From positions 124,001 through 188,000 of the IMG/VR virus record IMGVR_UViG_3300030503_000315: DNA of 64,000 nt. One strand, 5' to 3'. A model generated the notes under the pieces. That model was given only the letters and a program-made list of their open reading frames with translations, was not told the origin of the DNA and searched no databases. The position numbers were made by a program, and so were the translations under genes. Within the stretch, counting starts at the first letter, position 1, and every line of letters starts with the position of its first letter. This document shows, piece by piece, positions 26,585 to 47,502 of this stretch.

Positions 26585-26690
26585 GAATGCCGGTTCATGT
26601 AGACGTTGAAAGCGATGGTGATAGTAGATCGGATGTGAACGCCGGGTCGATCCGGAAAGGTGGGTTCGACTCCCACAATCCATCGTGACA
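26585..26690 (+). ncRNA. Candidate tRNA-like (T-loop) structured RNA
   Basis: Perfect T-arm GTGGG-TTCGACT-CCCAC at 26660-26676, closing helix CGATGG/CCATCG, intergenic between two AGTAAATA motifs; no CCA or canonical anticodon loop. Confidence 0.5.
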
Positions 26691-26850: not shown

Positions 26851-28791
26851 ATGTCGAGTATTCTTAATTCTTTCGCATCGGACTTCGACCAATCGCTGAA
26901 CGAAAAGTACAGCGTCCTGGAATATCTGGAAAACTGCCGTACGGACAAATCGTTCTACGCAACGGCAGCGGAACGGATGTTGAAAGCAATCGGTGAACCG
27001 CGCATGCTGGATACGTCGAAAGATGCGCGTCTCGGTCGTATCTTTGACAACCGGACAATCAAGGTGTACCCGGCGTTCGAAGAAGAGTTCTTCGGTATCG
27101 AGGACACAATTGAACGTCTAGTTGGTTTCTTCCGCGCAGCAGCACAGGGTCTGGAAGAACGCAAACAGGTTCTGTACATGCTTGGACCGGTAGGCTCTGC
27201 AAAGTCGAGTCTGGCAGAGAAGTTGAAGTACCTGATGGAACTCAACCCCATCTACGTGCTGAGCTACAAAAATCAGTTGTCCCCGGTGTTCGAATCTCCG
27301 CTCGGCCTCTTCCCGGTTCACAAGTATGGTGAACGTCTGGAAAAGGAATACGGAATTCATCGTCGTTACCTGACGAACCTGATCCCTTCGCCATGGGCTC
27401 TGAAACGTCTGAAGGAAACTAATGGTGATCTGTCTGATTTCAGCGTGGTCAAGATGTACCCGTCCAAGCTGAACCAGCAGGCAATCATGAAGGTCGAACC
27501 GGGGGATGAAAACAATCAGGACATCTCATCCTTGGTTGGTAAGATCAACCTTCGTCGTATCGATGCGCACGACCAGAACGACAGCGATGCATATCTGTAC
27601 TCGGGTGGCCTCTGCCGCTCCAATCAGGGCATGCTCGAATTCGTGGAAATGTTCAAGGCACCTATCAAGGTTCTTCACCCGTTGCTGACGGCGACGCAGG
27701 AAGGTAACTACGTTGGTACCGAAGCGCTTCCTCCTATTCCGTTCAGTGGTGTAGTAGTTGCGCACTCGAACGAAAGCGAATGGGAAACGTTCAAGAACAA
27801 CAAGAACAACGAGGCTTTCCTGGATCGTGTGTCCCTTGTGTCTGTACCGTATTGCAAACGCGTTGATGAAGAAATCAACATCTACAAGAAGATGCTTGGT
27901 GCTTCGTCATTGGCACAGTCGCCGATTGCACCGCAGACCTTGAAGTACCTGGCGCAATGGTCGATCTCTACACGGCTGAAGGAGCCGGAGAATTCCCTGC
28001 TGTTTTCTAAAGTCCGAGTCTACAACGGTGAGAACCTCAAGGACATCGATCCGCGAGCAAAGTCGACGCGTGAGTATCGCGATCACGCAGGTGTAGCTGA
28101 GGGAATGACAGGGATGTCTACCCGCTTCGCATTCAAGATCCTGTCGAAGACATTCAACAACGATGCGGAAGAAGTTGCAGCTGATCCGCTTCAGCTGATG
28201 GTTGTCCTGCAGAATGAGATCAAGCGCGAGCAGATGTCGAAGGAACAGGAAGAGAAGTACGAGTCGTTCGTCAAGGAAATGTCGCAACGTTACCTTGAGG
28301 ATCTGACGAAGGACATCCAGAAGGCATTCATCGAGAATAGCGAAGACTATTGCCAGAACCTGTTCGAACGTTATATCCAGTTGGCAGATGCCTGGTGCCA
28401 GGATTCGACGTTCAAGGACGATAACACCGGTTCGACAATGAACAAGGCAGAGATGGATCAGGAGCTGTCGAAGATCGAAAAGCCGGCGGGTATCGCGAAC
28501 CCGAAGGATTTCCGCCCTGAAGTCGTGCAGTTCGTACTGCGCGTTCAAGCTCGTAATGGTGGCAAGATGCCGCGCTGGAATTCGTATGAAAAGATGAAGC
28601 AGGTCATCGAAAGCAAGATGAGCGCTTCTCTGGACGAACTCCTCCCGGTGATCTCGTTCGAAACGAAGAAGGAAGTGAAGCTGCAGAAGGATCACGACTC
28701 GTTCGTGGAGCGTATGGAGAAGATCGGCTACACCTCACGTCAAGTTCGTCGTGTAGTCGAATGGTTCAGCCGCGCACGCAAGGCTAACTAA
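26851..28791 (+). CDS. prkA: PrkA/YeaG family AAA+ serine protein kinase
   Basis: GLEERKQVLYMLGPVGSAKSSL Walker A; EPGDENNQDISSLVGK; ANPKDFR. Confidence 0.95.
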   Translation: MSSILNSFASDFDQSLNEKYSVLEYLENCRTDKSFYATAAERMLKAIGEPRMLDTSKDARLGRIFDNRTIKVYPAFEEEFFGIEDTIERLVGFFRAAAQGLEERKQVLYMLGPVGSAKSSLAEKLKYLMELNPIYVLSYKNQLSPVFESPLGLFPVHKYGERLEKEYGIHRRYLTNLIPSPWALKRLKETNGDLSDFSVVKMYPSKLNQQAIMKVEPGDENNQDISSLVGKINLRRIDAHDQNDSDAYLYSGGLCRSNQGMLEFVEMFKAPIKVLHPLLTATQEGNYVGTEALPPIPFSGVVVAHSNESEWETFKNNKNNEAFLDRVSLVSVPYCKRVDEEINIYKKMLGASSLAQSPIAPQTLKYLAQWSISTRLKEPENSLLFSKVRVYNGENLKDIDPRAKSTREYRDHAGVAEGMTGMSTRFAFKILSKTFNNDAEEVAADPLQLMVVLQNEIKREQMSKEQEEKYESFVKEMSQRYLEDLTKDIQKAFIENSEDYCQNLFERYIQLADAWCQDSTFKDDNTGSTMNKAEMDQELSKIEKPAGIANPKDFRPEVVQFVLRVQARNGGKMPRWNSYEKMKQVIESKMSASLDELLPVISFETKKEVKLQKDHDSFVERMEKIGYTSRQVRRVVEWFSRARKAN

Positions 28792-28864
28792 GATTGTAGT
28801 TGCACCGGGTAGTTCCCCTGTAGTACCGTGTGAAGTGTAGTACGTAGTCTTGTAAGTTGTGAAG

Positions 28865-28900
28865 GGGGCAGCCTGTTTAAGTTAGGCTGCCCTTTTCCTT
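28865..28900 (+). terminator. Intrinsic terminator
   Basis: GGGCAGCCT/AGGCTGCCC stem followed by T tract. Confidence 0.8.
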
Positions 28901-28928
28901 TTTGTTTTCGAATTTCATAGGTACCACC

Positions 28929-29489
28929 ATGGAAACAATTGATAAGATTTTCAATTGGATGAATCAAGACGGGGCAAGATTCGGAGTAGGAATGTGGATC
29001 ATAGGTGTAGCGTTTGGTCTCTTCCTGTCCTTGATTATCAAGTGGGTCAATCCATGAGTGTTCTTCGCAAAGAAATCTCTCGTCTGAACCATGTTATTGA
29101 GCGCACCGAGCAAGAGATGATTAATCTAGAGGAAGATTTCTGGCAGAATGGTGGCATCTGTTGTCCGGGTTGTGGTGTACCTGGATTCTCAGAGATGGAA
29201 GAGAAGCAAGAGCGTAGGAAAAAGCAACTTAGATATCTTATCAAGAAGTACGAGAAGGACAGTGGGAGGAAATATGAAGATCATCCGGAAGCTCGTAGCC
29301 TGGCCAGCCGCATATTCAATTTTCTTCTTGGGCTTGATCCTGACTAGGTTGGGTTGGTACAAAGGTCAGTGGCATTGGTTTATGGACTTAGCGATGCATA
29401 TCAGGATTGGGGTGGTTGCCCGGGTCCATGGCTTCGCACAGAAGATGTTCATAATGCACGAAAGAACAGGTGATGTAGTAAATATTTGA
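28929..29489 (+). other. Three small genes inserted between prkA and yeaH
   Basis: 28929-29057 (42 aa membrane peptide), 29054-29347 (CCPGC motif), ~29272-29489. Confidence 0.55.
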
Positions 29490-29539
29490 TGGGCGGTATA
29501 AAACCGGGTGACGGGTAGATCGTCACCTCAACTGGAGGG

Positions 29540-30817
29540 TTGAAAATGTTTAGTCGGACTATTGTTGATGCACGACCACAATCGCAGTCTAAGACCTCGG
29601 CAGACCGGCAGAGGTTTGTTCGTCGGGCTAAATCTCAGATTCGTGAAGCAGTTAAGAAGGCAATCTCTACTGGCGATATCAAGTCATTGGAGAAGGGTCG
29701 CATTCGTGTTCCAGTCAAGGACATGAATGAACCCACGTTTGAGAACGACAGGGAATCCGGGTCCCGTGATCGCGTCTACACCGGGAACAAAGAATGGATT
29801 CCAGGTGACACGATTGCACGTCCTGAGGAAGGTGGAGGTAATGGTACTCAAGGATCGGATGATCCAAGCATTGGCAATGATGACTTCGCCTTCATTCTGA
29901 CTCCAGAGGAATTCTACGATATCTTGTTCGAGGATTTGGGTCTTCCTGATCTAATGAAGAAGACGATGAAGGATATCACGAAGGTCACTCGCAAACGCGC
30001 GGGCTTCGTTATCACGGGTAATCCTTCGCAGCTGGATATTCGCCAGACTTACAAGTTCGCATTCGCACGTCACAAGGCATTGGGTCGTCCTTCGAATGTA
30101 GACATCGAAGAAGCTGAAGAGGATCTCAAGGAAGCACAGGAGTGTGGAACACAATTCGATGCAGAACTAGTTGAAGATGCATTGAAGGAAATGAAAATCG
30201 CACAGAAACGTATCCCGCTCATTGATACAATTGATCTGCGATATCGCAACTATCCACCGCGTCCTGAGCCGATCACCAAGGCAGTGATGATTTGCTGTAT
30301 GGATGTTTCTGGGTCGATGGATGAGGATCGAAAGGATCTGGCAAAACGATTCTATCTCTTGCTATATGTCTGGTTGATGAAGCAGTACAATCAAAGGGTT
30401 GATATCGTGTTCATCCGTCATCACACGCGTGCGGAAGAAGTAGACGAACAAAAATTCTTCTACGATCAAGAATCAGGTGGTACAGTCGTAAGTCCAATCT
30501 TTGAACTCGCAGCTAAGATCATCAAAGATCGTTACAATCCTTCTGATTGGAACATCTACATGTGTCATGCATCTGACGGTGACAACTGGACAGATGACAA
30601 CAAGAAGGTTGTCGAGGCATTGGATGGTATGGCGTCTACCTTGCAATACTTTGCATATCTTCAGGTTACGGAAGAAGACGAGGACGAAGGAGATACGTTG
30701 TGGAACGCCTATCAAAAGGTGAGTGAACGACACAACCATATTCGTATGGTGTCCGCGGATGAACCTTCGGAAATCTGGCCGGTGTTTAAAGAGTTGTTCA
30801 CCAAGGATATGGCGTAA
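29540..30817 (+). CDS. yeaH: YeaH/YhbH (DUF444) vWA-like protein
   Basis: RQRFVRR, MDVSGSM, FIRHHT, ESGGT.VS, SDGDNW. Confidence 0.93.
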   Translation: MKMFSRTIVDARPQSQSKTSADRQRFVRRAKSQIREAVKKAISTGDIKSLEKGRIRVPVKDMNEPTFENDRESGSRDRVYTGNKEWIPGDTIARPEEGGGNGTQGSDDPSIGNDDFAFILTPEEFYDILFEDLGLPDLMKKTMKDITKVTRKRAGFVITGNPSQLDIRQTYKFAFARHKALGRPSNVDIEEAEEDLKEAQECGTQFDAELVEDALKEMKIAQKRIPLIDTIDLRYRNYPPRPEPITKAVMICCMDVSGSMDEDRKDLAKRFYLLLYVWLMKQYNQRVDIVFIRHHTRAEEVDEQKFFYDQESGGTVVSPIFELAAKIIKDRYNPSDWNIYMCHASDGDNWTDDNKKVVEALDGMASTLQYFAYLQVTEEDEDEGDTLWNAYQKVSERHNHIRMVSADEPSEIWPVFKELFTKDMA

Positions 30818-30823
30818 GGAGAA

Positions 30824-32347
30824 TTGGAAATGAAATCCGCTATCAAGACAATCAAGCCCGATTACCTGTTCACCACTTCTGAGTGGACATTCGAGATGCT
30901 TGAGAACACCCTTCGTCTTTGTGAAGACATTGGCAAGGAAGAGCTCGGCCTCAAGCTCATGCGTAATCAGGTTGAGATCATCACCAGCGATCAAATGCTT
31001 GAAGCCTACACTTCGGTAGGAATGCCGATTCACTATCATCACTGGTCGAACGGCAAGTCGTATCTTCAGCAAAAGCAAGCGTACAAGGGCGGTAACATGG
31101 GTCTGGCTTATGAGATCGTTATCAATAGCGATCCATGCATCGCCTACTGCATGGAAGAGAACAGCTCTGCTATGCAAACTCTCGTATTGGCCCATGCTTC
31201 GGTTGGACACAACTCAGTTTTCAACATGAATTATCTGTTCAAGCACTGGACGGATGCAACGGCTATTGTCGATTACCTGATCTTTGCGCGCAACTACATT
31301 CGTCAGTGTGAAGAGCGTTATGGTCTGGATGAAGTCGAAGAGATTCTCGACTCAGCTCATGCACTTCGCTACATGTCGTTCGATCGCCGCAAACGTCAGT
31401 CGACTTTGACGGAAGACCAGGAACAAAAGCGTCGCATGGATTTGTTGGAAGCGCTGGAGCGTGAGCGTTCACAGTATGATGATCTCATCCCAGTGGATGA
31501 ACGGGAGGATGAAGCTAAGGACAAGGATCGTGGTGATCTCAAAGAGCCGGAAGAGAACCTCCTGTATTTCCTTGAGAAGAACTCTCCTAATCTGAAGGCG
31601 TGGCAGCGTGAAATCCTTCGGATTGTACGGACAATCCAGCAGTACTTCTACCCGCAGATGCAGACGCAGGTGGTGAATGAAGGATGGGCGACATTCACTC
31701 ACTACTACATTCTCAATCGTCTGTATGAGATGGGAAAGATTACGGAAGGTGCGTTGCTTGAATGCATGACTTCGCATTCGCAGGTCCTTTTTCAACAGCC
31801 AATGAGTCCCAACCTGAATCCGTATGCACTTGGATTTTCTATCTACAAGGATATCAAACGGATGTGCGAGGAACCCACAGATGAAGATCGTGAGTGGTTC
31901 CCTAATCTGGTTGGTAAAGATTGGAAGGAAGAATGCCTGTTCGCCATGATGAACTTCAAGGACGAGTCGTTCATTCTTCAGTACCTTAGCCCAAAGGTTA
32001 TGCGTGACTTCCGCATGTTTGCCTTGACGGATGATGCAGACGAGGATCACTATCTGGTGAATAAGATTCACAACGATCCTGGGTATAAAGAGATTCGTTC
32101 GATGTTGAGTCAGCAGTATCGTATGGAAAACCGCATGCCGAACATGATGGTTGTCCGTGCAGACATGAAAGGCAATCGTCTTCTAACCGTACAGAACAAG
32201 ACGCAGAATAAGATTCTTCTTAAAGACGATCCCGCGAAAGATTCTGTGCAACATCTGGCGTATCTGTGGGGATACGACGTTAGAGTGGAAACCGTGGATG
32301 AGAGTGGTAAGGTCCTGCAATACTACACAGCTGAGGTGGAGAACTAA
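30824..32347 (+). CDS. ycgB: SpoVR/YcgB family protein
   Basis: GMPIHYHHWS.GK, LAYEIVINSDPCIAY, TQVVNEGWATF.HY, NPYALGF. Confidence 0.93.
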   Translation: MEMKSAIKTIKPDYLFTTSEWTFEMLENTLRLCEDIGKEELGLKLMRNQVEIITSDQMLEAYTSVGMPIHYHHWSNGKSYLQQKQAYKGGNMGLAYEIVINSDPCIAYCMEENSSAMQTLVLAHASVGHNSVFNMNYLFKHWTDATAIVDYLIFARNYIRQCEERYGLDEVEEILDSAHALRYMSFDRRKRQSTLTEDQEQKRRMDLLEALERERSQYDDLIPVDEREDEAKDKDRGDLKEPEENLLYFLEKNSPNLKAWQREILRIVRTIQQYFYPQMQTQVVNEGWATFTHYYILNRLYEMGKITEGALLECMTSHSQVLFQQPMSPNLNPYALGFSIYKDIKRMCEEPTDEDREWFPNLVGKDWKEECLFAMMNFKDESFILQYLSPKVMRDFRMFALTDDADEDHYLVNKIHNDPGYKEIRSMLSQQYRMENRMPNMMVVRADMKGNRLLTVQNKTQNKILLKDDPAKDSVQHLAYLWGYDVRVETVDESGKVLQYYTAEVEN

Positions 32348-40631: not shown

Positions 40632-41429
40632 ATGGCAAAGCTACATGAAGTGCTGGCATCGGAAAAGACAGTTACAGCCGCACGCGATCATCTGCATGAA
40701 GACACTCAGACAAAGTTTAAGAAAGCCGATCAATACTTTACAGGTATGATTAAATCCCTTAAGATGATCGAAGACTCTCCGGAAGCGGAGGCTATTGAAC
40801 AGGCAGCGAAGCAAGAGAAGGAACTCCCGACTACTCTAGTCACCACGATGGATTATTACCTTAGCTTCTGGGCTAAGGCAGAGAACCTCCTGTTTCAAAA
40901 GAACGTGACGAACACCCAAGCAGTGACCAGTCTATTATTCCGAGGCTCACTGGTTGCTGATAATGTTCCGGTTGATGAGTTGATGGGACTAGAAGTACGC
41001 ATTGGTGAATTGCGCAAACTAATTTTGGAAATGCCAACACTTGATGCTTCTAAGAATTGGGAGTTGGATTTGACTGCGCCGCAGGCTGGCACATGGAAAG
41101 CAACAAGCAATCAGGTAACGACCAAGACGGAGAAGGATGAAGTGACCGCAATTATTGTACCGGCAAATGATAAACATCCGGCACAGGTAAAGACGACCAT
41201 CAAAGACAAGGTAGTTGGTAAGTTCACATTGCAGACTTCGTCAGGCGCGACCACTGCAATTCAGAAGGCAAACATGATTGCTGCGATGGACGATTTCCTT
41301 ATCGAAGTCAAGACGGCTCGTACCCGGGCTAACTCTGTTGAGGTTGTTCCAGTTGACCCCATTGGGAATATCATCAAGGACATCCTCATGGCGTCACTGC
41401 TAGACGCACCCTCGAACAATCAGGTGTGA
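40632..41429 (+). CDS. Conserved hypothetical protein (recalled as DUF7873-like) directly upstream of large RNA
   Basis: MAKL..V.A.EK, VPV..L..LE, P.LD....W, A.DKHPAQV, SGA, VK.AR..AN..EV motifs. Confidence 0.7.
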   Translation: MAKLHEVLASEKTVTAARDHLHEDTQTKFKKADQYFTGMIKSLKMIEDSPEAEAIEQAAKQEKELPTTLVTTMDYYLSFWAKAENLLFQKNVTNTQAVTSLLFRGSLVADNVPVDELMGLEVRIGELRKLILEMPTLDASKNWELDLTAPQAGTWKATSNQVTTKTEKDEVTAIIVPANDKHPAQVKTTIKDKVVGKFTLQTSSGATTAIQKANMIAAMDDFLIEVKTARTRANSVEVVPVDPIGNIIKDILMASLLDAPSNNQV

Positions 41430-41430
41430 C

Positions 41431-41547
41431 ATGAACTGGCCGATGGCTTTTGCAATTGTTGGAGTAGTAGCTGCAGTGATGTTTGGCTCAGCAGCAAACG
41501 ATTATGTGGATAGCCCAAAGATAGCATGTACGCCGAATAGTAAATAA
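41431..41547 (+). CDS. Small membrane peptide
   Basis: 38 aa MNWPMAFAIVGVVAAVMFG... Confidence 0.5.
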   Translation: MNWPMAFAIVGVVAAVMFGSAANDYVDSPKIACTPNSK

Positions 41548-41625
41548 GTGTTGAAGGATTGTTGAAGGATTGTTGTAGCAAAACATACAGGAACAGGAAG
41601 CGTTATCATCCTCGTTAGCATCCTC

Positions 41626-41853
41626 GCCTTACGTTGGTTCGAATCCAGCCAGGCGCGCCAAGAGTTCTGCTGTATGTATACTTCATAAGATTGACATTAT
41701 CTGATTGAAGGAGAGGGCCGACGACTTCCGACAGCTCGCCCCTCATAATCCAGAAAACCTATTATGTTTCATAGCGAGTATGGAGTATGGTAGAATTCTT
41801 GACGCGCCTGTGACCCGAGAGGATAGGGCCCAGATTTCTAATCTGGTGTAGGC
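41626..41853 (+). tRNA. Circularly permuted tRNA-Arg(TCT)-like module: 3' part 41626-41660, 5' part 41804-41853
   Basis: T-arm + CAGGCGC-G-CCA upstream; GCGCCTG + D-arm + CCAGA-TTTCTAA-TCTGG downstream; acceptor strands perfectly complementary. Confidence 0.8.
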
Positions 41854-41955
41854 AATTATCGTTCTTGTATTACCTGTATGAGTTATCATAAGCAACTGCA
41901 GTATGAATCCCGTCGAGTTGCTGGCACACCCTACTGAATAGAGTGCCTAGCTAAA

Positions 41956-42519
41956 AATCAGAAGTCACGGGTTCGAATCCCGTCTCCGCCTCACTGTGTA
42001 TTATGGTATGACAAGAAAAGAGAAACGAAACTTTATCCGAGCCAATATCCAGAAAATTGGTGAATGCTGGATCTGGCAATTGAAGACGGATAGAGATGGT
42101 TACGGTTGGTATTCCTACAAAGGAAAATTGCGCCGGGCTCATAGATCCTCGTTTCACGCTTTCAAGGGAAAGATTCCAAAAGGTCTTTCTGTCTGTCATA
42201 CCTGCGACAATCCAAGCTGTGTGAGACCAAAACATCTGTTTGCGGGTACTCACAAACAAAACATGGAAGACATGGCAAAGAAGGGAAGATCTAATAAAGG
42301 CCGCCATGTTAATACCGGAGAGGCTCACGGTTATTCCGTTCTGACTGAAGAACTAGTTCTGTACATAAGAAAGGTATGTGCGGGAGGTAAATCACAGAAC
42401 TCTGTTGAAAGAGAACTTGGTTTATCCTCTGGACTTGTTAACAAGGTGGTCAGAAGAAAGCTTTGGACGCACATTTAGTATACAGTGAGGCGGAGTATCT
42501 CAGTGGTAGAGGTCTGATT
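41956..42519 (+). tRNA. Circularly permuted Cys-like tRNA module split at the anticodon loop: 3' half 41956-41993, 5' half 42489-42519
   Basis: AA-TCAGA-AGTC-ACGGG-TTCGAAT-CCCGT-CTCCGCC-T upstream; GGCGGAG-TA-TCTC-AGTGGTA-GAGG-TCTGA-TT downstream. Confidence 0.75.
42008..42478 (+). CDS. HNH homing endonuclease
   Basis: CWIW...GYG...AHR....F...IP.GL.VCHTCDNP.CVRP.HL..GT...N..D; C-terminal HTH-like segment. Confidence 0.93.
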   Translation: MTRKEKRNFIRANIQKIGECWIWQLKTDRDGYGWYSYKGKLRRAHRSSFHAFKGKIPKGLSVCHTCDNPSCVRPKHLFAGTHKQNMEDMAKKGRSNKGRHVNTGEAHGYSVLTEELVLYIRKVCAGGKSQNSVERELGLSSGLVNKVVRRKLWTHI

Positions 42520-42664
42520 CTATTCCTTATCGTAACTAACTCGAATGTGGTGGAAAGTGTGGTTGGGATTAATATCCAAAGTTCCAGGCAGGAGTCGGAT
42601 AAGACAAATGTTCTGGAACTTCCTAAAGAGTTTTCCACGAGAGCTCTTTAGAAAGACAAACAAG

Positions 42665-42695
42665 AAGGCTACCAATTTCGGTTGGTAGCCTTTTT
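42665..42695 (+). terminator. Intrinsic terminator
   Basis: AAGGCTACCAA/TTGGTAGCCTT stem plus T tract. Confidence 0.85.
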
Positions 42696-42829
42696 CTATC
42701 TTCGCCTACAGGGTTTTGAGCAAATTTCATGGGGATTGTGTCGAGGACACGACACTGAAACCTAAGGAGCTTTCCATGGCGTTACTCACACGTCTTTGCT
42801 CAACCTTGCTCACCCTGTACAGGAAGATC

Positions 42830-45758: not shown

Positions 45759-46334
45759 GTGATGCGAACCTGGTGTGCAATCGATTTAGAAACTCTAAGC
45801 CTTAAGCAATCTACATGTCCGATTCTTAGCCTTGGCGCTGTTTCCTATAGTTTTGAGGAAGGGATAACTGCAGAGTTCCATGAATTCTTTAATGTAGACG
45901 AGCAGTTCAAGTTAGGTCGTCTACCTCAGTGGAAGACCATCCAATGGTGGCTAAAGCAATCGGATGATGCACGCACGCCCATGTCTGGGGAACGGAAAGA
46001 TACGCTTACTGTGGATGAGATGACGGATGAATTCTATGAGTGGTGGGATGAGGAGGTAGGAACTCCAGCCCAACATTGGGCGGAAGATTTCGATTACAAG
46101 CTAGGAGCCCGAGCCATATCGAATGGCTCAAACTTCGACATCGCTATACTCGAATCCCTGTTCGATGAAGTGCCTTGGCATTTCAGGAATACACGTTGCT
46201 ATCGTTCAATGATTGATTGGTTCCCCGCACCAGTTCAACCACGTCAGACAATCAAACACGATGCCTTGCAAGATGCAATATACCAGGCGAAGGTCCATTT
46301 GAATTTAATGGTTTCGAATGAAAATCTGAGGTGA
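45759..46334 (+). CDS. DEDDh 3'-5' exonuclease (Rv2179c-like)
   Basis: IDLETL, NGSNFDIAIL, HDALQDA. Confidence 0.88.
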   Translation: MMRTWCAIDLETLSLKQSTCPILSLGAVSYSFEEGITAEFHEFFNVDEQFKLGRLPQWKTIQWWLKQSDDARTPMSGERKDTLTVDEMTDEFYEWWDEEVGTPAQHWAEDFDYKLGARAISNGSNFDIAILESLFDEVPWHFRNTRCYRSMIDWFPAPVQPRQTIKHDALQDAIYQAKVHLNLMVSNENLR

Positions 46335-46609
46335 TATTATGGAAGAGCTTGCTGTATCGGTCTTGGTTCTTATTCTCCTTCTTGTTCTAGGTCGTTACGT
46401 ACACTATAGACATGAGAAGTGGAAGATAGATGTCTATACCGAAGGTTGGAAGTACGCCAGCTCTTCCCTCAAGAATCACACAGAGACCTATGACTCTCTT
46501 GAAACCAATGTTAAGCTTGCCAAGGGCATTGGAATTTTCGGAGAGTATCATAGAGGGATAGAGAATTACCTGTCCATCACCCCACCATTCAAGAGGCTTC
46601 AAGACTTCG

Positions 46610-47146
46610 ATGAACAACACAATGAGTAAGATCCTATTCATGGATATCGATGGAGTACTTAACTCCAGACGATCCGAGATCGCGCACGCGGCTGGCTTCC
46701 TACCCAGCCCAAACTCTCCTTGGCAGGAACAACTTCCTCGCGCATTCCAGGATATCGATTGGATTGCCGTTGGGATGATTCATGTTCTCTGCACCAGGCT
46801 AGACGCAAAGATTGTCATAAGCTCAAGCTGGCGCGCAAACTACAAGCCGGAACAGTTGGCTAAGTACTTCAACTTACCAATGATTATCGATGCCACGGAT
46901 CAGTTGGAAAGTAATCGTGGTGGCCAGATTCAGCGATGGCTGAATGCCCATCCTGAAGTCACCCAGTATGCAATCGTGGATGACAACTCAGGGATGCTTG
47001 AATCACAGGCAGATCATTTTGTGCAGGTGGATTGGGACGAGGGTTTGACATATAAAGACTGTTCTCGTCTGCGTGATATCCTTCAGGGCATCTTTGCACC
47101 TCAACCTCGTAATCCTGCACGGTTCATTCTCTTTGACGAGATCTAA
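46610..47146 (+). CDS. HAD-family phosphatase (Swiss Army Knife RNA-repair type)
   Basis: FMDIDGVLN, IVISSSWR, RG..I..WL, YAIVDD. Confidence 0.85.
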   Translation: MNNTMSKILFMDIDGVLNSRRSEIAHAAGFLPSPNSPWQEQLPRAFQDIDWIAVGMIHVLCTRLDAKIVISSSWRANYKPEQLAKYFNLPMIIDATDQLESNRGGQIQRWLNAHPEVTQYAIVDDNSGMLESQADHFVQVDWDEGLTYKDCSRLRDILQGIFAPQPRNPARFILFDEI

Positions 47147-47148
47147 TA

Positions 47149-47502
47149 ATGAATATGAATAAAGGTTCTTGGATAGGCGTAGATTTTGACGGGACGCTTG
47201 CCTATTACGACCATTGGCGTGGTAAAGATCATCTAGGAAAACCAATCCCTTTGATGGTCGCCAGAGTAAAACGACTATTAGAAAAAGGTCTAACCGTAAA
47301 GATTTTCACTGCTCGTGCCTACATGGCAACACAAGAAGAGATTGATGCAATCAAGGCGTGGTGTCTAGAGCATATTGGCCAGGAACTTGAAGTAACGTGC
47401 ATCAAAGATATGGGCATGGTTCAACTTTACGATGACCGTGCAACTCAGGTTGTTCTCAACACCGGAAAGATTGTCTACCTAAAGAAGGACAAAGTAAAAT
47501 GA
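47149..47502 (+). CDS. HAD-family phosphatase (PNK phosphatase-like)
   Basis: GVDFDGTLA, IFTAR, LYDDRA. Confidence 0.85.
   Translation: MNMNKGSWIGVDFDGTLAYYDHWRGKDHLGKPIPLMVARVKRLLEKGLTVKIFTARAYMATQEEIDAIKAWCLEHIGQELEVTCIKDMGMVQLYDDRATQVVLNTGKIVYLKKDKVK

What the first reader, a model, noticed from the sequence alone, without database searches (positions are those of the whole stretch)
41626..41853. Circularly permuted tRNA-Arg(UCU) split in the variable arm
Seen: T-arm GTTGG-TTCGAAT-CCAGC and acceptor CAGGCGC-G-CCA (41633-41660) lie ~143 nt upstream of GCGCCTG (41804), a D-arm with GGATA and an intact anticodon arm CCAGA-TT TCT AA-TCTGG. The acceptor stem and G73 resemble E. coli argU (GCGCCCT/AGGGCGC-G-CCA). 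The break is closed by GCCT(T)AC 41626/GTAGGC 41848. The intervening segment is clamped by a 16 bp helix with G:U pairs (AAGAGTTCTGCTGTAT 41660/GTATGGTAGAATTCTT 41785), which suggests selection at RNA level. Standard tRNA scanners would miss it. Permuted tRNA genes are established in algae and an archaeon, and to my knowledge not in phages.
Basis: partly seen in the sequence, partly recalled or inferred. Interest (0 to 1): 0.88.

Follow-up and report, generated by a model that had tools for sequence, protein, structure and literature searches.

The report
Permuted tRNA mimic in phage RNA
The two tRNA halves in reversed order are real and conserved, but they are one of two tRNA-shaped modules built into a roughly 0.5-kb structured noncoding RNA of phiRSL1-like and other phages, closest in design to bacterial Y-RNA-like tRNA mimics, so probably not an ordinary decoding tRNA.

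Summary
Observation confirmed. 41626-41660 (variable-arm strand, T arm, 3' acceptor, G-CCA) and 41804-41853 (5' acceptor, D arm, UCU anticodon arm, variable-arm strand) fold exactly as described, and ARAGORN calls the rejoined sequence tRNA-Arg(tct).

It is not a lone oddity. A second permuted tRNA-like module lies just downstream (41957-41991 and 42489-42518, open in the anticodon loop, with an HNH gene in its acceptor hairpin). The same module pair follows the DUF7873 gene in about 30 related loci, including cultured phages (Ralstonia phiRSL1, Klebsiella FBKp24, Rhizobium TM30, Vibrio D505), with strong covariation.

Both modules sit inside nested long-range helices of one promoter-to-terminator RNA. 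Across relatives the cloverleaf body is kept, but the "anticodon" arm of module A becomes a GNRA- or UUCG-capped hairpin, is absent, or the whole module is lost. CCA is not conserved.

Orthologues of module B hit Rfam YrlA below threshold (30-38 bits). No Ro60 gene or Ro60-binding motif is present.

Best reading: a new Ro60-independent, DUF7873-linked variant of YrlA-type tRNA mimics. A true decoding tRNA-Arg in this clade remains possible (about 15%).

The parts
40632..41429 (+). DUF7873 gene, the only neighbour conserved next to the RNA in all relatives
   Evidence: Pfam PF25283, E = 1.6e-53. The RNA follows its homologues in about 30 loci. Fold searches were uninformative.
41537..41546 (+). 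Phage promoter-like motif ATAGTAAATA upstream of the RNA
   Evidence: 18 matches in the window against 2.7 expected, all oriented with the local genes. The same motif lies right after the DUF7873 stop codon in L003, L004 and phiRSL1.
41584..41625 (+). Leader: 5' strand of long-range helix P_LX (41584-41597), then a junction with CGTTATC/CGTTAGC repeats
   Evidence: P_LX covaries: UACAGG/CCUGUA, UAGAGG/CCUCUA, UUAGGG/CCCUAA, UAUGGG/CCCAUA.
41626..41660 (+). Module A 3' half: variable-arm strand GCCTTAC, T arm, 3' acceptor strand, G73, CCA
41657..41803 (+). Acceptor-capping extension of module A: a clamp helix continuing the acceptor stem (41657-41676 with 41784-41803, several G:U pairs) and a variable distal part
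   Evidence: In most relatives this is a 26-37 nt hairpin, and about 100-150 nt in the window, L003, L034, L036, L010/L011 and L023.
41804..41853 (+). Module A 5' half: acceptor 41804-41810, D arm 41813-41828, anticodon-like arm 41830-41846 (TCT 41837-41839), variable-arm strand 41848-41853
41854..41956 (+). Linker X: TTATCGT 41856-41862; P_LX 3' strand 41873-41880; three strands pairing with Y (41893-41900, 41909-41912, 41914-41919); hairpin 41923-41947
   Evidence: Consensus fold of 8 relatives with compensatory changes in each long-range helix.
41957..41991 (+). Module B 3' half: closing (anticodon-stem) strand ATCAG, variable loop, T arm, 3' acceptor CTCCGCC, U73
   Evidence: Orthologue alignment: 89.6% paired, 26 of 27 pairs with double changes.
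41992..42488 (+). Acceptor-capping hairpin of module B carrying an inserted HNH homing-endonuclease ORF (41996-42478)
   Evidence: Pfam HNH_3, E = 6e-12. The spacer is 25-37 nt in relatives, and about 495 nt only in the window and L008.
42489..42518 (+). Module B 5' half: acceptor GGCGGAG, D arm (TCTC/AGTGGTA/GAGG), closing strand CTGAT
   Evidence: The L003 orthologue hits Rfam YrlA at 30 bits, E = 2e-4.
42519..42622 (+). Region Y: TTATCGTAAC 42527-42536; strands pairing back to X (42538-42543, about 42546-42552, 42558-42565); hairpin 42565-42578; conserved hairpin 42578-42622
42665..42700 (+). Terminator-like hairpin; on the + strand a run of T follows
   Evidence: Hairpin reported (scored there on the minus strand); T-run read.

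Best explanation
The finding is module A of a two-module tRNA-mimic RNA. One transcript runs from the phage promoter motif at 41537 to the hairpin near 42690 and folds into two nested domains. A leader/X helix encloses module A. A three-segment X/Y helix encloses a hairpin and module B. Each module is an L-shaped tRNA body: a 7-bp acceptor stem stacked on a 5-bp T arm, and a D arm whose GG can meet the T loop. The acceptor end is capped by a hairpin, and the anticodon or variable side is plugged into the scaffold. That wiring is what makes the halves look permuted. Shown here: the structure, its conservation and covariation, and its linkage to the DUF7873 gene. Inferred: the RNA works as YrlA-type Y-RNA-like molecules are thought to, presenting tRNA elbows and acceptor helices to tRNA-recognising proteins. 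Candidates are RNase P, TruB and the CCA-adding enzyme, or a host tRNA-targeting factor, probably together with the DUF7873 protein. RNase P may cut at G1 (41804, 42489), leaving pieces held together by the helices. The repeated single-stranded UUAUCGU-type junction motifs are candidate protein-binding sites. The UCU anticodon-like arm of this clade is a peripheral hairpin of the module, possibly inherited or captured from a class II-like tRNA.
For: The module pair is present after DUF7873 in all 25 IMG/VR loci, in 6 further contigs and in 4 cultured phages. Covariation: module B, module A, long-range helices. MFE folds of module A from about a dozen of the 21 relatives tested give the same junction. 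Module B orthologues match the tRNA-like core of Rfam YrlA: FBKp24 37.9 bits, E = 6.5e-7; L003 30 bits; Rhizobium TM30 35.9 bits over the full model. The anticodon arm is not conserved: rejoined module A is tRNA-Arg only in the window, L034 and L004, and is otherwise '???', Ile(aat) or not called. Module A is absent in L037 while the scaffold and module B persist. The acceptor hairpins tolerate a 0.5-kb HNH insertion and 100-150 nt extensions. TTATCRT occurs 4 times on the + strand within this 1-kb locus, out of 25 matches in 64 kb on both strands.
Against: There are no expression, processing or binding data. The YrlA hits are far below the gathering score (69 bits), and module A itself gets none. 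DUF7873 has no recognisable RNA-binding fold. Within the window's clade the 7-nt loop UUUCUAA is identical in three phages whose stems differ by compensatory changes, and the ArgRS identity elements are present. This is what a working tRNA-Arg(UCU) would show.
Confidence: 0.6

Rival explanations
1. A genuine permuted or two-piece tRNA-Arg(UCU). RNase P cuts at G1 (41804), the capping extension is trimmed back to CCA (41660), and the two strands stay paired through the acceptor and variable-arm helices, or are ligated. ArgRS charges it and it reads AGA/AGG for the phage.
For: ARAGORN calls the rejoined sequence tRNA-Arg(tct) in the window, L034 and L004. U33, A37, A38, A20, C35, U36 and G73 are present and a G15:C48 pair is possible. 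CCA is encoded in the window. AGA plus AGG make up 27% of Arg codons in window ORFs, and the only Arg tRNA called in the window is ACG. M. smegmatis YrlA shows that a capped 7-bp acceptor can be opened by RNase P and receive CCA in vivo (PMC4201824).
Against: L003, the closest relative by DUF7873 identity (73%), has an 8-nt loop and no CCA. Other relatives have tetraloops, no arm or no module. The module stays tethered to leader and X, which are themselves paired. The D stem has an A10/C25 mismatch and an extra D-loop base before A14. G73, C75 and A76 are paired within the clamp helix (C74 faces an A). No bulge-helix-bulge junction or ligase is apparent. Sister module B cannot be a tRNA.
Confidence: 0.15
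2. A bona fide Y RNA: the modules bind a Ro60 (TROVE) protein encoded elsewhere in the phage or host and tether it to an exoribonuclease.
For: YrlA covariance-model hits to module B orthologues. Rhizobium phages carry both DUF7873 and a TROVE gene about 6 kb apart. A 3'-5' exoribonuclease and HAD 'RNA repair' genes lie 3-5 kb downstream in this clade.
Against: No TROVE domain appears among the reported Pfam hits for 94 window ORFs, or within 6 kb in L003 and L004. tblastn with phage phiLo Ro60 finds 92 phage records, but not phiRSL1, the Klebsiella/Serratia phages or the Vibrio phages that carry the RNA. The GNCGAAN0-1G motif is absent from the window and has no fixed place elsewhere. In Rhizobium TM30 the Ro60 gene has its own YrlA-like RNAs directly upstream, separate from the DUF7873-linked one.
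Confidence: 0.1
3. Mainly RNA-processing punctuation: the tRNA-like bodies only serve to direct RNase P or RNase Z cuts that separate and stabilise neighbouring transcripts, including the HNH mRNA.
For: Strict 7 + 5 bp acceptor/T minihelix in all copies. Position between genes in a tRNA-rich region. Tolerance of an ORF inside the capping hairpin.
Against: This would not require the elaborate covarying scaffold (P_LX, X/Y helices), the conserved junction motifs or the D arms. The RNA has its own promoter and terminator.
Confidence: 0.1
4. Non-functional debris: leftovers of tandem tRNA duplication and deletion, or of homing-endonuclease-driven rearrangement.
For: An HNH gene lies in the locus and tRNA genes lie nearby.
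Against: The same order is kept across phages whose DUF7873 proteins share only 28-73% identity, with dozens of compensatory changes. The HNH gene is present in only 2 of about 30 loci.
Confidence: 0.02

Closest known systems
YrlA (Y RNA-like A, Rfam RF02553) of bacteria and Ro60-encoding phages
   Same: Same wiring: closing stem, T arm, acceptor stem closed by a loop, D arm, closing stem. tRNA-like T and D loops. Tandem copies. M. smegmatis YrlA has a 7-bp acceptor stem and is cut by RNase P and CCA-tailed (PMC4201824). Module B orthologues give significant sub-threshold YrlA hits.
   Different: Scores are 30-38 bits against a gathering score of 69. Module A gets no hit. There is no Ro60-binding motif and no TROVE gene nearby. 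The modules are embedded in a larger covarying scaffold and linked to DUF7873. Module A opens at the variable arm and keeps an anticodon-position hairpin.
Circularly permuted tRNA genes of the red alga Cyanidioschyzon merolae, some green algae and the archaeon Thermofilum (from my own knowledge)
   Same: The 3' half precedes the 5' half on one transcript, and the rejoined sequence is a cloverleaf.
   Different: Those have a bulge-helix-bulge junction cut by the splicing endonuclease, a circular intermediate and a conserved usable anticodon. Here there is no such junction, no known bacterial or phage enzyme for it, a non-conserved anticodon arm, and flanks that are part of a larger fold.
Two-piece (permuted) tmRNA
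   Same: The T arm and 3' acceptor strand are encoded upstream of the 5' acceptor strand, with an excised spacer between them. There are weak beta_tmRNA tRNA-like-domain hits. A true permuted tmRNA occurs elsewhere in relative L020.
   Different: No G3:U70, no tag reading frame, no tmRNA call by ARAGORN. A full D stem is present.
E. coli argU-type tRNA-Arg(UCU)
   Same: Anticodon loop differs only at position 32. GGATA in the D loop (A20), G73, CCA.
   Different: Permuted. Class II-like long variable arm. Irregular D stem. Acceptor end closed by a long helix.

Membership tests
Circularly permuted tRNA gene | 3' half upstream of 5' half on the same strand; the halves complement into a cloverleaf | tested here: met
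Circularly permuted tRNA gene | Leader and trailer form a bulge-helix-bulge junction for splicing-endonuclease cleavage and circularisation | tested here: not met
   The fold and the consensus fold show a 4-6 bp closing helix. It is followed by a 28/19-nt internal loop and then the P_LX helix, not two 3-nt bulges around a 4-bp helix.
Circularly permuted tRNA gene | Usable 7-nt anticodon loop conserved among orthologues | tested here: not met
   Kept only in the window, L034 and L004. It is 8 nt in L003, 6 nt in L035, a tetraloop in L008, L012, L013 and L016, absent in L018, L025, L026 and L027, and the whole module is missing in L037.
Circularly permuted tRNA gene | Mature aminoacylated tRNA produced | not testable with these tools
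   Needs RNA end mapping and charging assays.
YrlA / Y RNA-like (RF02553) | Order: closing stem - T arm - acceptor stem-loop - D arm - closing stem, with tRNA-like loops | tested here: met
   Module B. Alignments to the YrlA model. Module A is a variant that closes at the variable arm.
YrlA / Y RNA-like (RF02553) | Reaches Rfam gathering score (69 bits) | tested here: not met
   30-37.9 bits for module B orthologues. No YrlA hit in the window locus, where the HNH insert interrupts module B.
YrlA / Y RNA-like (RF02553) | GNCGAAN0-1G Ro60-binding motif near the 5' end | tested here: not met
   No match in the window RNA; sporadic matches at inconsistent places in relatives.
YrlA / Y RNA-like (RF02553) | Encoded within about 4 kb of a Ro60 (TROVE) gene on the same strand | tested here: not met
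   No TROVE among the reported Pfam hits for window ORFs, nor among genes of L003 and L004. phiRSL1, Klebsiella and Vibrio carriers are absent from the TROVE tblastn hits.
Two-piece tmRNA | G3:U70 alanine identity and a tag reading frame | tested here: not met
   Acceptor stems have C3-G70 (module B) and G3-C70 (module A). ARAGORN finds no tmRNA.
tRNA-Arg(UCU) | ArgRS identity set (A20, C35, U36/G36, A/G73) and a canonical cloverleaf | tested here: inconclusive
   The identity bases are present and ARAGORN accepts the rejoined sequence. However, the gene is not contiguous, there is an A10/C25 mismatch, the variable arm is long and open, and charging is untested.

The most novel reading that the evidence does not exclude
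In the window's clade (window, L034, L004), module A has been kept or captured as a working two-piece tRNA-Arg(UCU). It would be matured by RNase P and 3' trimming out of a larger scaffold RNA and used to read AGA/AGG. That would be the first permuted or split decoding tRNA in a bacterial virus, made without a splicing endonuclease.
Probability: 0.15. Interest if true: 0.9.

Novelty: new variant of a known kind. Interest (0 to 1): 0.68.

Why it matters
If this reading holds, many phages carry an unannotated structured RNA of about 0.5 kb. Carriers include cultured jumbo phages of Ralstonia and Klebsiella/Serratia, and phages of Rhizobium and Vibrio. The RNA displays two tRNA look-alikes and always travels with one protein of unknown function (DUF7873). 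That would extend the Y-RNA-like tRNA-mimic principle beyond Ro60 and give DUF7873 a testable RNA partner. It would also explain spurious or missing tRNA calls in these genomes: the 'tRNA-Sup-TTA' annotated in Klebsiella phage FBKp24 overlaps module B. The system is tractable for asking what phages gain by mimicking tRNA shape. The possibilities are processing, decoy or tether, and in one clade perhaps real decoding.

Tried and rejected
1. Nucleotide search of the locus against 50,697 phage records found no match for the 901-nt region or the 50-nt 5' half. The only exact hit in IMG/VR is the source contig itself.

2. Permuted intron-exon (group I) or flanking small-ribozyme circularisation. 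I considered this because conserved sequence flanks both modules. I dropped it because the flanks pair with each other as covarying helices, no intron or ribozyme family appears even at E <= 10, and module B's flanks cannot supply a consistent 7-nt anticodon loop.

3. A tmRNA-like tag frame after module B: the apparent short frame is not kept in L008.

4. The small ORF after an AGGAG...ATG in region Y: the SD and ATG are not kept in L036, so this is more likely an RNA hairpin.

5. DUF7873 structure (pLDDT 81): Foldseek against PDB and BFVD gave nothing with E <= 0.001.

6. A crude 'longest complementary run' statistic for module A's closing helix did not beat shuffles (5.9 against 5.9). Support for that short helix rests on its position, the MFE folds and the GCCU/AGGC to GUCC/GGAC changes.

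7. The T-arm-like hairpin at 26655-26680 is not a significant structure (z = 0.2).

8. PHROGs and NCBIfam gave no RNA ligase among the downstream genes.

Full report
**1. What is in the sequence**

The window is part of IMG/VR contig IMGVR_UViG_3300030503_000315 (215 kb). The loci fetched from that contig cover the finding and its flanks, and where they were read (L001) or matched (L002, L006) they agree with the window. By its DUF7873 protein, the contig's closest relative among the deposited phage records is Ralstonia jumbo phage phiRSL1, at 58% identity.

An unconstrained fold of 41615-41865 returns the permuted cloverleaf. Its parts are:
- a closing helix (41626-41632 with 41848-41853);
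- a T arm;
- a 7-bp acceptor stem (41650-41656 with 41804-41810);
- a long helix that continues the acceptor stem from G73:C-1;
- a 3-bp D stem;
- a 5-bp stem with the loop UUUCUAA.

The fold energy is -84.6 kcal/mol, z = -3.96. The opposite strand folds less well because the G:U pairs become C/A mismatches. ARAGORN and the Rfam tRNA model do not see the locus. After joining 41804-41853 to 41626-41660, ARAGORN reports tRNA-Arg(tct).

**2. A second module and a common transcript**

A search for the complement of a second orphan T arm plus acceptor strand (41967-41990) found GGCGGAG at 42489. This module B has an acceptor stem, T arm, D arm and a 5-bp 'anticodon' stem (ATCAG 41957-41961 with CTGAT 42514-42518). 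It has no anticodon loop: the stem opens into the flanking RNA. An HNH homing-endonuclease ORF (41996-42478) sits in the loop of the hairpin that caps its acceptor stem.

Upstream lies the motif ATAGTAAATA (41537-41546). This motif is enriched in the window (18 matches against 2.7 expected) and is strand-matched to the genes. Downstream lies a terminator-like hairpin near 42665-42692.

**3. Relatives**

Homologues of the upstream DUF7873 gene led to about 30 loci and to cultured phages. Every one of the 25 IMG/VR loci has at least one such module directly after the DUF7873 gene. Most have two modules about 200 nt apart, in the order T arm, 3' acceptor, spacer, 5' acceptor, D arm. The same holds for:
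- phiRSL1;
- Klebsiella phage FBKp24, where an annotated 'tRNA-Sup-TTA' overlaps module B;
- Rhizobium phage TM30 and Vibrio phage D505, in each of which my scan found one module.

The spacer is normally a 25-37 nt hairpin that prolongs the acceptor helix. The 147-nt spacer of module A is shared, at 100-150 nt, with L003, L034, L036, L010/L011 and L023. The HNH insert in module B is shared only with L008.

**4. Covariation**

| Element | Sequences | Cells paired | Pairs with changes on both sides | Covariation score | Shuffled | Slid |
|---|---|---|---|---|---|---|
| Module B | 19 | 89.6% | 26 of 27 | 0.82 | 0.25 | 0.14-0.23 |
| Module A (T stem, acceptor, clamp base) | 9 | 94.7% | 17 of 21 | 0.69 | 0.23 | 0.05-0.14 |
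| Module A acceptor plus clamp, long-spacer relatives | 6 | - | 17 of 26 | - | - | - |

The acceptor and T stems were part of my search criterion. The D stem (94.7% paired) and the closing stem were not.

Within the window's clade the acceptor stem reads GCGCCUG, GCGGCGG or GCGACGG, each with a matching partner strand. The anticodon-like stem is CCAGA/UCUGG or CCGGA/UCCGG. The closing helix is GCCU/AGGC or GUCC/GGAC.

**5. The modules are parts of a larger fold**

I computed a consensus fold of eight relatives with the long spacers trimmed. It gives the following.
- A leader/X helix that encloses module A: UACAGG/CCUGUA, UAGAGG/CCUCUA, UUAGGG/CCCUAA, UAUGGG/CCCAUA.
- Three X/Y helices that enclose a hairpin and module B. 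Examples are CAACUGCA/UGUGGUUG against CAACGGUA/UACUGUUG and CAACAGCG/CGCAGUUG, and CGAGUU/AACUCG against CACCCU/AGGGUG and AAGGUU/AGCCUU.
- Two further hairpins.

Junctions carry repeated UUAUCGU-like motifs. TTATCRT occurs four times on the + strand in this 1-kb locus, out of 25 matches in the 64-kb window on both strands. So the 'permutation' results from plugging a tRNA-shaped body into a scaffold through its variable or anticodon side and closing its acceptor end.

**6. Is module A a decoding tRNA?**

For:
- In the window, L034 and L004 the loop UUUCUAA is identical although the stems differ.
- U33, A37, A38, A20 (GGATA), C35, U36 and G73 are present, and CCA is encoded in the window.
- ARAGORN calls all three rejoined sequences tRNA-Arg(tct).
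- AGA plus AGG are 27% of Arg codons in window ORFs.

Against:
- L003, the closest relative by DUF7873 identity (73%), has an 8-nt loop and AACA instead of GCCA.
- L035 has a 6-nt loop and phiRSL1 has CUAAUCA.
- L008, L012 and L016 have GNRA tetraloops, L013 has UUCG, and L036 has an ATCA cap.
- L018, L025, L026 and L027 have no such arm.
- L037 lacks module A altogether but keeps the scaffold and module B.
- G73, C75 and A76 are base-paired in the clamp (C74 faces an A).
- Both strands of the module continue into paired scaffold.
- There is no bulge-helix-bulge junction, and I found no ligase among the neighbouring genes.

I therefore put a decoding role at about 15% for this clade, and essentially zero for the family as a whole.

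**7. Comparison with known families**

With relaxed thresholds, module B orthologues match the tRNA-like core of Rfam YrlA:

| Orthologue | Bits | E-value | Model positions |
|---|---|---|---|
| FBKp24 | 37.9 | 6.5e-7 | 23-88 of 114 |
| L003 | 30 | 2e-4 | 23-86 of 114 |
| Rhizobium TM30 | 35.9 | 4.8e-5 | 1-114 (full) |

All are below the gathering score of 69. There are also weaker matches to the tRNA-like domain of beta-proteobacterial two-piece tmRNA.

YrlA RNAs have the order V, T, acceptor stem-loop, D. They mimic tRNA, are modified by TruB and DusA, and in M. smegmatis are cut by RNase P and CCA-tailed (PMC4201824).

The defining Ro60 link is missing here:
- No TROVE domain appears among the reported Pfam hits for 94 window ORFs, or near L003 and L004.
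- tblastn with the Ro60 of Thermus phage phiLo (identified through PDB 9KOP) finds 92 phage records. These do not include phiRSL1, the Klebsiella/Serratia phages or the Vibrio phages that carry the RNA.
- The GNCGAAN0-1G motif is not conserved.
- In Rhizobium TM30 the TROVE gene has its own YrlA-like RNAs directly upstream, distinct from the DUF7873-linked one.

No Rfam 15 family reaches threshold on these elements in 18 relatives. Full-text searches found no paper on permuted tRNAs in phages or on DUF7873.

**8. Mechanism**

Shown:
- a promoter-to-terminator unit on the + strand;
- a nested, covarying fold with two L-shaped tRNA bodies whose acceptor ends are capped;
- invariant T-loop and D-loop GG features and a strict 7 + 5 bp minihelix;
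- obligatory linkage to DUF7873.

Inferred:
- The modules engage proteins that read tRNA shape.
- RNase P may open the capped acceptors at 41804 and 42489, which would explain the tolerance of large inserts in the caps.
- DUF7873 and the repeated junction motifs may form the RNP.

DUF7873 gave a confident model (pLDDT 81) but no informative fold match. Downstream in this clade lie a 3'-5' exoribonuclease (Rv2179c-like) and HAD/'Swiss-army-knife RNA repair' type genes. This is compatible with an RNA-metabolism role, but these genes are not conserved in distant carriers.

**9. Verdict**

The object is a new, Ro60-independent, DUF7873-linked variant of YrlA-type tRNA mimics embedded in a larger phage RNA. 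No step had to be referred.

Noticed in passing
window 41957-42518: Second permuted tRNA-like module (B), Gly-like in its D arm and U73, open at the anticodon loop. An HNH homing-endonuclease ORF (41996-42478) is inserted in the loop of its acceptor-capping hairpin. The same kind of insert occurs only in L008.
   Followed up: yes
L005 5066-5189 (phiRSL1 record about 188800-188930); also L010 449-565, L014 4296-4430, L029 1622-1755: Normal-order tRNA genes with a 50-60 nt insert in the anticodon loop. Rfam tRNA scores 41 bits for phiRSL1. ARAGORN does not call them and the one in phiRSL1 is not annotated in the record. The insert is too short for a group I intron, and how it would be removed is unknown.
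   Followed up: partly
L031 3518-3597 (Klebsiella phage FBKp24, record 46041-46120): The annotated 'tRNA-Sup-TTA' overlaps the 3' half of module B and is probably a scanner artefact of the permuted module.
   Followed up: partly
window, 18 sites, e.g. 26519, 26720, 41537, 45055, 45720, 54499: The motif (A/G)TAGTAAATA is enriched (18 against 2.7 expected) and always oriented with the local genes. It is likely a phage-specific promoter.
   Followed up: partly
L020 91-300: A permuted (two-piece) tmRNA gene (Rfam RF04321, 73 bits) about 2 kb upstream of the DUF7873 gene in a related viral contig.
   Followed up: no
window 26851-32344: A PrkA kinase - DUF444 (YeaH-like) - SpoVR operon carried by the phage. 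It is also present in huge uncultured phages, Ralstonia phage RsoM2USA and Thermus phages.
   Followed up: no
window 26655-26680: An isolated T-arm-like hairpin (GTGGG TTCGACT CCCAC) between two promoter motifs. The surrounding fold is not significant (z = 0.2) and there is only a weak tRNA-Sec-like hit (E = 0.64).
   Followed up: partly
window 41550-41572 and 41584-41597: Window-specific additions in the leader: a tandem GTTGAAGGATT repeat and a duplicated ACAGGA that offers two registers for the leader/X helix.
   Followed up: no
window 45759-47499: Rv2179c-like 3'-5' exoribonuclease, a HAD_SAK_2 ('Swiss army knife RNA repair') domain protein and a HAD/polynucleotide-kinase-like protein. They are syntenic in L003 and L004, 3-5 kb downstream of the RNA.
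   Followed up: partly
L041 4876-5410 (Rhizobium phage RHph_TM30, record about 139475-140010): Two YrlA-like RNAs and a partial tRNA-like hit lie in the unannotated 1.2-kb gap directly upstream of the phage's TROVE (Ro60) gene.
   Followed up: partly
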